The position numbers and the translations under genes are program-made. A stretch of DNA of 63,510 bases, filler included, from Octopus bimaculoides (Eukaryota), in assembly GCF_001194135.2 (NCBI RefSeq). It is 7 parts of 6 records of this genome, joined end to end, with 100 filler letters (N's around TTAATTAATTAA, not from the genome) between each part and the next. Parts side by side here need not be neighbours in the genome. Positions count along the whole stretch, not along the records: positions 15,154 to 31,108 come from NC_068981.1; 6 more parts are not named here. One strand, given 5' to 3'. The notes under the pieces are model-generated. The model saw only the letters and a list, made by a program, of their open reading frames with translations. It was not told the DNA's origin and made no database searches. Shown here one piece after another: positions 24,825-25,352 of this stretch (the stretch's first letter is position 1; every line of letters begins with the position of its first letter).

Positions 24825-25090
24825 GTAAGATTAAGCATTCTGAGCATATGCATTGCAACAATTGGCTGGCTATTGATGGAGTATGGAATTCTAAATTGCT
24901 TCTAATCTAAAGTGTGAAGATAAATTATTTAAGAAACCATATGAAAACAAGACAAATGTGTGAATAAGTTAATATACATTATGTCACATACTTATATTAA
25001 GAATATTCTCAAATACTTAGCAGTTGAGTAGTTTTCCAATTGTTTTATCGATTGTTAATCTTAATTATTTTCTTATAGAAAATTGCAGAA

Positions 25091-25352
25091 ATGAAAATGC
25101 GGGTCATAACATTTGGCCTTCTTCTGTGCTTCCTCTCTGAAGCTTCTGGCAGATTTTACTTCCCAACACAACCCAATACAACACCATGGTGGAATAATCA
25201 TGGCGATCAAACACGTAATGGTGGAGATCAGACACAAAATGGTGGCGATCAAACCCGAAATGGTGGAGACCAAACCCGAAATGGCGGAGATCAAACACAA
25301 AATGGCGGAGATCAGACACGAAATGGCGGAAATCAGATACAAAACAGAACAG
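25091..25352 (+). CDS. First coding exon of an uncharacterised secreted protein with GDQT(R/Q)NG heptad repeats
   Basis: Acceptor at 25078 and ATG at 25091. MKMRVITFGLLLCFLSEASG is a classic signal peptide (basic n-region, hydrophobic h-region, A-x-G cleavage). Seven 21-nt repeats vary mostly at synonymous positions. Phase-1 donor AG|GTAAAT at 25353. Confidence 0.85.
25202..25348 (+). repeat. Coding 21-bp tandem repeat, 7 units
   Basis: GGCGATCAAACACGTAATGGT / GGAGATCAGACACAAAATGGT / GGCGATCAAACCCGAAATGGT / GGAGACCAAACCCGAAATGGC / GGAGATCAAACACAAAATGGC / GGAGATCAGACACGAAATGGC / GGAAATCAGATACAAAACAGA. Confidence 0.95.

What the first reader, a model, noticed from the sequence alone, without database searches (positions are those of the whole stretch)
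25079..25352. Orphan secreted protein with GDQT(R/Q)NG heptad repeats showing signs of protein-level constraint
This is the only convincing host coding exon in 63 kb. Seen directly: a signal peptide, an aromatic/Pro-rich leader (RFYFPTQPNTTPWWNNH), and 7 heptads. Differences between units are mostly synonymous (GGC/GGA, GAT/GAC, CAA/CAG, ACA/ACC, CGT/CGA, GGT/GGC); in units 1-6 the only amino-acid change is R/Q, and unit 7 is more diverged. Two N-glycosylation sequons (NTT, NRT) bracket the repeat. I recognise no known family. Gly/Asn-rich repeats occur in secreted molluscan matrix proteins such as nacrein, and Asn-Gly bonds deamidate readily. A lineage-specific structural, adhesive, mucus or gland protein is therefore plausible but is inference.
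Basis: partly seen in the sequence, partly recalled or inferred. Interest (0 to 1): 0.75.

Follow-up and report, generated by a model that had tools for sequence, protein, structure and literature searches.

The report
First coding exon of octopus matrix protein
The repeat-bearing reading frame is real, but it is not an orphan: it is the start (export signal plus a floppy seven-residue-repeat tail) of a large, already predicted, cysteine-rich, chitin-binding secreted protein of Octopus bimaculoides that is conserved in the argonaut octopus.

Summary
Window 25091-25352 (+) encodes a signal peptide, the leader RFYFPTQPNTTPWWNNH, six clean GDQT(R/Q)NG heptads and one degenerate unit. Six of the seven variable columns fall at third codon positions (P=8.5e-4).

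The "orphan" reading does not hold. The 87 residues equal residues 1-87 of RefSeq XP_014775857.1 and XP_014775856.1, "balbiani ring protein 3-like" of Octopus bimaculoides (776 and 822 aa).

The model's next residues are encoded by a 21-nt micro-exon at 26678-26698, so the GT at 25353 is the donor used.

Argonauta hians has the same exon, with the same splice sites, six heptads and both N-glycosylation sequons. dN/dS between the species is 0.14, with dS about 1.1. It also shares the micro-exon, a non-coding 5' exon, a TATA box and a 108-nt promoter block that is 94% identical.

The rest of the protein lies outside the piece. It carries a CBM14 chitin-binding domain, 14 CXCXC (BR3P, "silk homology") repeats and a Laminin-G3-like C-terminal domain.

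The heptads are most likely a disordered, hydrophilic N-terminal tail of a chitin-associated matrix protein. That role is inferred, not shown.

Verdict: a genuine coding exon that is already in public gene models. Interest is low to moderate.

The parts
21090..21792 (+). Conserved upstream (promoter) block, running into the non-coding first exon
   Evidence: blastn of the piece against the Argonauta hians locus: window 21090-21792 matches L001 9331-10013 at 72.8% identity over 720 nt, E=1e-105 (alignment). Intron flanks of exon 2 are at shuffled-sequence level, 60-65%.
21535..21642 (+). Core 108-nt cis-regulatory block, containing GTCACATGATGTCAC
   Evidence: 102 of 108 bases are identical to L001 9770-9877, although synonymous sites of the gene are saturated (dS about 1.1).
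21724..21731 (+). TATA box (TATATAAA)
   Evidence: CTATATAAAGC is identical in Octopus (21724) and Argonauta (L001 9945). Function is inferred.
21756..21841 (+). Non-coding exon 1 (5' UTR). The start is approximate, about 32 nt after the TATA box. The end is defined by the donor AGAAAG|GTAAGACTAAA.
   Evidence: The same 17-nt donor context occurs in Argonauta at L001 10040-10056, where the annotated model's first exon ends. Exon 1 plus the 12 nt before 25091 contain no ATG.
21842..25078 (+). Intron 1, holding an assembly gap at 21949-22030, an (AT)n array and SINE-like repeats
25079..25352 (+). Exon 2, the finding: 12 nt of 5' UTR, codons 1-87 and the first base of codon 88 (phase-1 donor)
   Evidence: 100% identical to residues 1-87 of P0001 and P0113. 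Acceptor and donor positions are conserved in Argonauta (L001 20148..20415).
25091..25150 (+). Signal peptide MKMRVITFGLLLCFLSEASG (residues 1-20)
   Evidence: Basic n-region; hydrophobic core with mean Kyte-Doolittle 2.8; A at -3 and G at -1. Argonauta has the same layout, MKMQAISFGFLLLFCSEAFG. This is a heuristic reading; SignalP was not run.
25151..25201 (+). Aromatic/Pro leader RFYFPTQPNTTPWWNNH with the sequon N29-T-T
   Evidence: 14 of 17 residues are identical in Argonauta; dN=0.078 with synonymous sites saturated.
25202..25348 (+). Heptad array: 6 x GDQT(R/Q)NG plus the degenerate unit GNQIQNR (21-nt units in register from 25202)
   Evidence: Argonauta has six units at the same place.
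25353..26677 (+). Intron 2 (1325 nt, phase 1), holding a (TG)n array
26678..26698 (+). Exon 3: a 21-nt micro-exon, cag|TTGGAGATGGCCTTCCACCAA|gtaagt, encoding (V)GDGLPP(N), residues 88-95
   Evidence: tblastn of P0001 and direct reading. The conserved Argonauta counterpart is at L001 21005-21025 with the same phase and canonical splice sites.
26699..31108 (+). Start of intron 3. The remaining exons (residue 95 onward) lie beyond the piece.
   Evidence: tblastn finds no further P0001 exons in the window. They are in L002, the O. bimaculoides chromosome CM046601.1, which does not overlap the piece.

Best explanation
The region is the first coding exon (exon 2 of the transcript) of an Octopus bimaculoides gene. 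RefSeq once modelled the gene as "balbiani ring protein 3-like" (XP_014775856.1 and XP_014775857.1, 822 and 776 aa).

Transcription most likely starts about 30 nt after a conserved TATA box at 21724. A non-coding exon of about 86 nt is spliced to 25079. Translation starts at the first ATG, 25091. The exon is then spliced at 25352|25353 to a 21-nt micro-exon (26678-26698) and on to exons outside this piece.

The product enters the secretory pathway, and the signal peptide is probably cleaved after Gly20. The mature N-terminus is the conserved RFYFPT.PNTTP.WNN leader followed by six to seven G-[D/S]-Q-T-[R/Q]-N-G heptads. After that come a CBM14 chitin-binding domain, a second six-cysteine module, 14 CX10CXCX3C (BR3P, "silk homology") repeats of 23 residues, and a Laminin-G3-like jelly-roll domain.

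- **Shown:** exon identity, splice structure, purifying selection and domain content.
- **Inferred:** the heptad array has no hydrophobic residue, is rich in Gly/Asn/Gln/Thr and is flanked by two conserved N-glycosylation sequons. It is most likely an intrinsically disordered, strongly hydrated N-terminal tail or spacer. It would project from a disulfide-rich protein that binds chitin and cross-links into an extracellular matrix such as a cuticle, lining or capsule.

My confidence is about 0.95 that this is this exon of this gene. It is about 0.4 for the proposed role of the heptads.
For: **Identity**
- An exhaustive HMMER search of 1.84 billion representatives gives P0001 at E=2e-50, 100% identical over query residues 1-87 and stopping exactly at the proposed donor.
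- P0001 is XP_014775857.1 and P0113 is XP_014775856.1.

**Splicing**
- Residues 88-95 are encoded by the micro-exon at 26678-26698, which has canonical splice sites.

**Conservation in Argonauta hians (P0114, locus L001)**
- The AG-to-ATG distance is the same 12 nt and the donor is the same CAG|GTAAAT.
- There are six heptads and both sequons.
- dN=0.153, dS=1.10, omega=0.14. The heptads alone give omega 0.127. Fisher P=3e-10.
- The micro-exon is conserved.
- The 5' non-coding exon donor, the TATA box and a 108-nt block with 102/108 identity are conserved.

**Within the arrays**
- In Octopus, 6 of 7 variable columns are at codon position 3 (P=8.5e-4). In Argonauta it is 6 of 9 (P=0.009).

**Domains**
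- CBM_14: 40.6 bits against a gathering score of 22.1. PDB 4z4a, a CBM14 protein, matches at E=6e-4.
- CXCXC: 27.5 bits against 15. There are 14 regex matches to CX10CXCX(1-3)C at a 23-residue period.
- Laminin_G_3: E=7.9e-5, 23.3 bits, below the gathering score.
- The AF2 model of the C-terminal domain (pTM 0.64) matches ConA-like jelly rolls in Foldseek, E about 1e-5.

**Heptad composition**
- G12 Q8 D6 T6 N6 R4, mean Kyte-Doolittle -2.3.
Against: - No RNA-seq or proteomic data could be consulted. Transcription and splicing rest on two annotation models and on conservation.
- The current O. bimaculoides model (XP_014775856.2, 421 aa) and the O. vulgaris model CAI9715631.1 (392 aa) lack this exon. 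The first is explained by an N gap inside the CXCXC exon at L002 9465-9867. In O. vulgaris an upstream 564-aa model runs off the fetched locus.
- Disorder of the heptads is inferred from composition only. The full-length AF2 model was uninformative, with pLDDT 30 throughout.
- No experiment links the protein to chitin or to any tissue.
Confidence: 0.85

Rival explanations
1. It is a stand-alone small secreted protein or peptide precursor. The transcript reads through the GT at 25353 to ...NRTGK*, with the stop at 25358-25360 and a C-terminal Gly-Lys that could act as an amidation signal. It would be polyadenylated after the AATAAA at 25375-25380, either as the only product or as an alternative short isoform.
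For: The 89-aa ORF ends with GK and then TAA, and AATAAA lies 15 nt downstream. Nothing here excludes a minor isoform that retains the intron or uses early polyadenylation.
Against: - In Argonauta the TAA is TCA. Read-through there gives a different tail, GKSKILHR*, while the donor CAG|GTAAAT is identical.
- The public models in both species splice here, and the matching phase-1 micro-exon is conserved.
- AATAAA is expected by chance in DNA that is 66% A+T.
- The exact 89-aa product is not on record in the assembly collection.
Confidence: 0.05
2. It is a non-coding 21-bp minisatellite, possibly carried by a transposon, that happens to be open in several frames next to a chance ATG and hydrophobic stretch. 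The old gene model would then have included it wrongly.
For: - Five of six frames are open across the array.
- The piece is full of microsatellites, SINE-like repeats and TE-like ORF remnants.
- Newer gene models omit the exon.
Against: - Variation falls at third positions in one frame only.
- There is an orthologous exon at the syntenic place in Argonauta with omega 0.14 and conserved splice sites, while the flanking introns are at random-level identity.
- There is no second copy of the unit in the piece.
- Among 1.84 billion representative proteins the only cephalopod hit is this gene's own cluster. The other repeat hits checked come from Nematostella, a tick, a horse, a damselfly, bacteria and unnamed ENA records.
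Confidence: 0.02
3. The exon assignment is the same, but the heptads act as an acidic Ca2+- or mineral-interacting repeat, like the Gly/Asn repeats of nacrein or the repetitive low-complexity domains of shell-matrix proteins.
For: - The repeat is rich in Gly, Asn and Asp, and D-x-T-x-N-G loosely resembles Ca-binding loops (resemblance from memory).
- Molluscan matrix proteomes are rich in repetitive low-complexity domains and in chitin-binding plus LamG3 proteins, including the Argonauta eggcase (bioRxiv 10.1101/2021.07.10.451900).
Against: - Asp is not conserved. It is Ser in 4 of 6 Argonauta units, and the array's net charge changes from -2 to +1.
- The array is only 42-49 residues long.
- No carbonic-anhydrase or other mineralisation-specific domain was found.
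- The gene is present in shell-less Octopus.
Confidence: 0.08

Closest known systems
RefSeq models XP_014775856.1 / XP_014775857.1 ("balbiani ring protein 3-like" isoforms X1/X2, Octopus bimaculoides) and the Argonauta hians orthologue ("balbiani ring protein 3-like, partial", P0114)
   Same: The finding is residues 1-87 of the Octopus models (100% identity). The Argonauta protein is 72-77% identical overall, with the same N-terminal layout.
   Different: Nothing differs; it is the same gene. The later model XP_014775856.2 / A0A0L8H375 (421 aa) lost the N-terminal half because of an assembly gap.
Chironomus Balbiani ring 3 secretory protein and the VEGF-C "silk homology" domain (Pfam CXCXC, PF03128)
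   Same: The octopus protein has 14 CX10CXCX3C units at a 23-residue period. It scores above the Pfam gathering score for CXCXC. The signature is described in PMC5816233. All are secreted, disulfide-rich proteins.
   Different: The resemblance concerns the middle of the protein, not the finding. I know of no heptad array, CBM14 or LamG3-like domain in BR3 or VEGF-C (from memory, not tested). Orthology to BR3 was not tested, and the name is a similarity label from an annotation pipeline.
Molluscan Pif-like (Laminin G3) chitin-binding matrix proteins, e.g. those in the Argonauta eggcase matrix
   Same: The layout is signal peptide, chitin-binding (ChtBD2/CBM14) domain(s), then a C-terminal Laminin_G_3-type domain (bioRxiv 10.1101/2021.07.10.451900).
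   Different: The octopus protein has CXCXC repeats inserted between these domains and the heptad tail in front. Its LamG3 match is below the Pfam threshold. No phylogeny was made, and no sequence of a Pif-like protein was compared directly.
Nacrein-type Gly-X-Asn repeats and other repetitive low-complexity domains of shell-matrix proteins
   Same: It is a Gly/Asn-rich tandem repeat in a secreted molluscan protein.
   Different: There is no sequence relationship and no carbonic-anhydrase domain. The period is 7, not 3. The acidic residue is not conserved.
Unrelated proteins with G-G-D-Q/E-x-R-x heptads, e.g. Nematostella A7RMN5 (MAM-domain protein, (GGDQERS)n)
   Same: The heptad motif is similar: 61% identity over the repeats, E=5e-39.
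   Different: They come from unrelated taxa, have unrelated flanking sequence and do not match the leader. This is convergent low complexity, not homology.

Membership tests
O. bimaculoides gene for XP_014775856.1 / XP_014775857.1 | The exon translation equals the start of the model and ends at the model's exon junction. | tested here: met
   100% identity over residues 1-87, with the next 8 residues encoded by the micro-exon at 26678-26698.
Secreted proteins with a cleavable N-terminal signal peptide | Basic n-region, hydrophobic h-region of 7-15 residues, and small residues at -3 and -1. | tested here: met
   MKMR / VITFGLLLCFL / SEASG|R. Mean KD is 2.8, with A at -3 and G at -1. The layout is conserved in Argonauta. 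This is a heuristic only; no SignalP was run.
CBM14 / peritrophin-A chitin-binding domain proteins (PF01607) | Pfam HMM above the gathering score, and the six-cysteine pattern. | tested here: met
   40.6 bits against 22.1 (Octopus) and 38.3 bits (Argonauta) for residues 88-160. Cys spacing is 17-5-14-12-7. PDB 4z4a matches at E=6e-4. The domain lies outside the window. Chitin binding itself was not tested.
CXCXC / BR3P "silk homology" repeat proteins (PF03128) | Repeated CX10CXCXC signature and the Pfam HMM above the gathering score. | tested here: met
   14 regex matches at a 23-residue period. 27.5 bits against 15 on a 110-aa segment. Whole-protein scans missed it.
Orthologue of Chironomus Balbiani ring 3 protein | Orthology shown by phylogeny or shared overall architecture. 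| not tested
   No BR3 sequence was on hand. The name comes from an annotation pipeline.
Laminin_G_3 / ConA-like lectin domain (PF13385) | Pfam HMM above the gathering score, or a confident jelly-roll fold. | tested here: inconclusive
   23.3 bits against a gathering score of 27.6, E=7.9e-5, in 2 of 3 orthologues. The AF2 model has pLDDT 60 and pTM 0.64 and is all-beta. Its Foldseek top hits are all ConA-like folds, TM 0.4-0.6.
Pif-like (LamG3) shell/eggcase matrix proteins | ChtBD2 domain(s) plus LamG3, grouping with Pif-like proteins in a phylogeny, and presence in a matrix proteome. | tested here: inconclusive
   The architecture is partly shared. The phylogeny and the proteome presence were not tested.
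Orphan (taxonomically restricted, family-less) gene | No homologue and no known domain. | tested here: not met
   There is an Argonauta orthologue and O. vulgaris partial models. Pfam domains are present. Only the heptad/leader segment itself has no family.
Transposon-borne or dispersed minisatellite | Many dispersed copies with no positional orthology. | tested here: not met
   The piece holds a single array, and Argonauta has a syntenic orthologous exon. A genome-wide copy count in O. bimaculoides could not be made.
Amidated peptide precursor (read-through ...GK*) | A conserved C-terminal Gly-basic-stop, or dibasic processing sites between repeats. | tested here: not met
   The stop is not conserved in Argonauta, and there are no dibasic sites in the array.

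The most novel reading that the evidence does not exclude
The conserved Q-T-x-N-G-G heptad array could be an octopod-specific functional module rather than a passive spacer. It carries six or seven Asn-Gly bonds, the dipeptide most prone to deamidation. These could act as a built-in deamidation/isoaspartate "timer" or cross-linking and hydration switch. Such a switch would control how a hybrid chitin-binding, BR3P-silk-like, LamG3 protein matures in a cuticle, sucker lining or egg-capsule matrix. Nothing here tests this. It rests on the invariance of N-G-G and Q-T in both species while the charged positions vary.
Probability: 0.1. Interest if true: 0.5.

Novelty: already known. Interest (0 to 1): 0.22.

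Why it matters
**Practical value**
- The work shows that the current chromosome-level O. bimaculoides annotation carries only a truncated 421-aa model of this gene, because of an assembly gap.
- The true gene starts more than 7 kb further upstream, with a TATA promoter, a non-coding exon, this exon and a 21-nt micro-exon. That correction is usable as it stands.

**Biological value**
- The protein joins three matrix-type modules: CBM14, BR3P/"silk homology" CXCXC repeats and a LamG3-like domain. Ahead of them is an octopod-conserved low-complexity tail.
- It is a reasonable candidate component of a chitinous octopus structure such as the sucker lining, beak, radula, gut cuticle or egg envelope. 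No function has been shown.
- The promoter block, 94% identical between Octopus and Argonauta, is a ready-made candidate tissue-specific regulatory element.
- None of this overturns anything. It is an ordinary, already deposited gene whose function is unstudied.

Tried and rejected
**Searches that missed or found nothing**
- Word-indexed protein searches with the exon and with the N-terminal 249 aa returned nothing, although the database holds P0001 with this exact sequence. These are false negatives. The early "no homologue" impression was wrong until the exhaustive search.
- An exact look-up of the 89-aa read-through ORF found nothing on record.
- Whole-protein Pfam scans of P0001, P0113 and P0114 gave no real domains. 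Only domain-sized pieces gave CBM_14, CXCXC and Laminin_G_3.
- Rfam and tRNA scans of the piece were empty.
- Pfam on TE-like ORFs in the piece gave nothing meaningful.
- Literature searches found no paper with "balbiani ring protein 3" and octopus, none of the 11 BR3 papers concerns cephalopods, and none contains the heptad peptide strings.

**Structure work that failed or was weak**
- AF2 on the full-length two-sequence alignment gave pLDDT 30 and was unusable, so it says nothing about disorder of the heptads.
- A PDB profile search with the C-terminal domain gave no significant hit.

**Limits of the data**
- The O. bimaculoides (L002) and O. vulgaris (L003) loci do not reach back to this exon. 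The only cross-species comparison of the exon is therefore with Argonauta.

**Rejected**
- Homology with the other repeat hits, which come from unrelated taxa.
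Full report
**1. What is in the sequence**

Window 25091..25360 (+) is an 89-codon ORF. It reads MKMRVITFGLLLCFLSEASG RFYFPTQPNTTPWWNNH (GDQTRNG, GDQTQNG, GDQTRNG, GDQTRNG, GDQTQNG, GDQTRNG) GNQIQNR TGK*.

- Tandem Repeats Finder reports a 21-bp array at 25201-25335 with 6.4 copies and 85% matches.
- The unit occurs nowhere else in the piece, and shuffles give no matches.
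- Among units 1-6, seven columns vary. Six are third codon positions of this frame (hypergeometric P=8.5e-4) and the seventh is the R/Q change.
- Read in the other two forward frames, the same variants are 0/7 and 2/5 synonymous.
- At the two-fold sites (GAY, CAR, AAY) only synonymous transitions are seen, while the four-fold sites carry transversions.

One caveat applies. The array is open in five of six frames, so openness alone proves nothing.

**2. What it belongs to**

The first, word-indexed protein search found nothing, and Pfam had no family for the ORF. The exhaustive HMMER scan of 1.84 billion representative proteins then gave one decisive hit.

- P0001 (776 aa) is 100% identical to ORF residues 1-87 and stops exactly at the proposed GT donor.
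- The cluster look-up names P0001 as XP_014775857.1, [quoted passage not shown].
- Isoform X1 (P0113, 822 aa, XP_014775856.1) starts with the same sequence.
- The later XP_014775856.2 / A0A0L8H375 (421 aa) and O. vulgaris CAI9715631.1 (392 aa) are C-terminal fragments.
- The remaining hits are repeat-only matches from Nematostella, a tick, a horse, a damselfly, bacteria and unnamed ENA records. They are convergent low complexity.

So the piece is O. bimaculoides DNA, and the exon is not an orphan.

**3. Gene structure inside the piece**

*Micro-exon.* Residues 88-95 of the model, (V)GDGLPP(N), are encoded by a 21-nt micro-exon at 26678-26698. Its context is ttttccctactgtttcag|TTGGAGATGGCCTTCCACCAA|gtaagt. 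This fits the phase-1 donor at 25352|25353. No further exons lie in the piece.

*Remaining exons.* They are found in the chromosome-level locus L002 (CM046601.1), which does not overlap the piece. Intron 3 is therefore longer than about 7 kb. L002 has an N gap at 9465-9867 inside the CXCXC-repeat exon. That explains why the current model starts only after the gap, and why nothing is annotated over the N-terminal half there.

*Upstream region.* Comparison with the Argonauta hians locus L001 shows the following.

- Window 21090-21792 aligns to L001 9331-10013 at 72.8% over 720 nt, E=1e-105.
- A 108-nt core at 21535-21642 has 102 of 108 bases identical.
- The TATA box CTATATAAAGC at 21724 is identical in both species.
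- The donor AGAAAG|GTAAGACTAAA is identical, with the exon ending at 21841. This is exactly where the first exon of the Argonauta model ends.

The putative non-coding exon 1 (about 21756-21841) plus the 12 nt before 25091 contain no ATG. The ATG at 25091 is therefore the first in the mRNA.

The acceptor before the finding (ttcttatag|AAAATTGCAGAAATG) has its Argonauta counterpart (ttttcaaag|ATAATTGCAAAAATG) at the same 12-nt distance from the ATG.

**4. Constraint across species**

The Argonauta exon (L001 20148-20415) encodes MKMQAISFGFLLLFCSEAFG RFYFPTLPNTTPGWNNR, then GDQTRNG x2, GSQTQNG x3, GSQTRNG, then MYQNRT.

| Segment | dN | dS | omega |
|---|---|---|---|
| Whole exon | 0.153 | 1.10 | 0.14 |
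| Heptads | 0.123 | 0.974 | 0.127 |
| Leader | 0.078 | saturated | not computable |

These are Nei-Gojobori estimates. A Fisher test of synonymous against non-synonymous differences gives P=3e-10.

- Exon DNA identity is 77%. The 200 nt on either side are at the level of shuffled sequence, 60-65%.
- Both N-glycosylation sequons, the signal-peptide layout and the number of full heptads (six) are conserved.
- Within each heptad, G, Q, T, N and G are invariant in both species. D/S and R/Q vary.
- Four Argonauta units share GSQT, a two-base change from GDQT. This indicates some concerted evolution inside the array.
- The Argonauta array also concentrates its variation at third positions: 6 of 9 columns, P=0.009.
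- The read-through stop (GK*) is not conserved, but the donor is.

**5. The whole protein**

Scanned as domain-sized pieces, the protein gives the results below.

| Region (P0113 numbering) | Family | Result |
|---|---|---|
| Residues 88-160 | CBM_14 (PF01607) | 40.6 bits, gathering score 22.1 |
| Residues 110-161 | PDB 4z4a (CBM14 protein) | E=6e-4 |
| Residues 162-217 | none (second six-Cys module) | no family hit |
| 110-aa segment of the repeat region | CXCXC (PF03128) | 27.5 bits, gathering score 15 |
| C-terminal 194 residues | Laminin_G_3 (PF13385) | 23.3 bits, below gathering 27.6, E=7.9e-5 |

- There are 14 CX10CXCX(1-3)C matches at a 23-residue period. This is the signature that PMC5816233 describes for Balbiani ring protein 3 and the VEGF-C "silk homology" domain.
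- An AF2 model of the C-terminal domain (pLDDT 60, pTM 0.64, twelve strands) matches only ConA-like jelly rolls in Foldseek: GH16 enzymes, calreticulin, clostridial HCN domains and collagen IX NC4.
- The protein is 10% cysteine.
- Whole-protein Pfam scans missed all of this.
- The closest published architecture I found is the "Pif-like (Laminin G3)" protein of the Argonauta eggcase matrix: a signal peptide, three ChtBD2 domains and LamG3 (bioRxiv 10.1101/2021.07.10.451900).

**6. How the finding most likely works**

*Shown:* the exon supplies the start codon, the signal peptide and the N-terminal 67 residues of the mature protein.

*Inferred:* the heptad array is a disordered, strongly hydrated tail or spacer in front of the chitin-binding and disulfide-rich modules of a secreted matrix protein. 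Three features point that way.

- It has no hydrophobic residue; its composition is G12 Q8 D6 T6 N6 R4, with mean hydropathy -2.3.
- It lies between two conserved glycosylation sequons.
- Its uncharged polar positions are the ones under constraint.

Asp is not conserved, so an acidic Ca2+-binding role like that proposed for nacrein-type repeats is less likely. The conserved Asn-Gly-Gly triplets leave open a more specific chemistry, namely deamidation or isoAsp formation. I cannot test that here.

**7. Rivals**

- A stand-alone read-through peptide (...NRTGK*, AATAAA at 25375) is not excluded as a minor isoform. It is not conserved (confidence 0.05).
- A non-coding minisatellite is contradicted by sections 1 and 4 (confidence 0.02).
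- A mineral-binding role for the repeat has confidence 0.08.

**8. Novelty and verdict**

The exact sequence is already in public gene models, so the finding is "already known" as a predicted coding exon. I found no paper on the gene or on the heptad motif.

What this analysis adds:
- the corrected 5' structure: promoter, non-coding exon and micro-exon;
- the explanation for the truncated current model;
- the cross-family evidence of purifying selection;
- a domain assignment linking the protein to chitin-binding, BR3P-like and LamG3 matrix proteins.

Interest is low to moderate.

Noticed in passing
window 21535-21642 (within 21090-21792): A 108-nt promoter block is 94% identical between Octopus and Argonauta (102/108) although synonymous sites are saturated. 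It contains GTCACATGATGTCAC, which from memory looks like a T-flanked E-box next to a CRE-like half-palindrome. It is a candidate tissue-specific regulatory element.
   Followed up: partly
L002 9465-9867 (O. bimaculoides CM046601.1, about 84.92 Mb): An assembly gap lies inside the CXCXC-repeat exon. The current 421-aa model (XP_014775856.2 / A0A0L8H375) starts after it, and no gene is called over the N-terminal half. The X1/X2 isoforms differ by one 46-aa repeat copy in this same region, so they may reflect the assembly rather than splicing.
   Followed up: partly
L003 1-9605 (O. vulgaris OX597814.1): A separate 564-aa gene model lies directly upstream of the 392-aa model and covers the CBM14 and CXCXC exons. 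The O. vulgaris gene seems to be split into two models. The first one runs off the fetched locus, so its N-terminus could not be read.
   Followed up: partly
window 19611-19981, 23466-23676, 24297-24482, 30109-30327: Several copies, in both orientations, of a SINE-like interspersed repeat about 110-190 nt long and 74-85% alike. The same element hits the O. vulgaris locus twice at 88-90%. ARAGORN finds no intact tRNA.
   Followed up: partly
window 15480-15737 (-), 19112-19682 (-), 29426-29794 (-): These ORF fragments look by eye like remnants of retroelement and mariner-type transposase genes. Pfam gave no significant hit, so this is unconfirmed.
   Followed up: partly
window 16317-16507: A 26-bp tandem repeat (ACTGCCTGGTACTGCATCCGGGAGCC, about 7 copies) is interrupted by a 10-N gap. 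Its nature is unknown.
   Followed up: no
window 20465-20812, 22031-22456, 25529-25694, 25861-25919, 27199-27286, 31061-31108: There are long (AT)n, (TG)n/(AC)n and (TC)n microsatellites, and N gaps at 20590-20736 and 21949-22030. This is typical repeat-rich intronic and intergenic DNA.
   Followed up: no
tools (against 18, 27; against 67, 68): The word-indexed protein search missed a 100%-identical database protein twice. Whole-protein hmmscan missed CBM_14 and CXCXC, which score above the gathering score on domain-sized pieces. Negative results from these tools on repeat-rich, Cys-rich proteins should not be trusted.
   Followed up: yes
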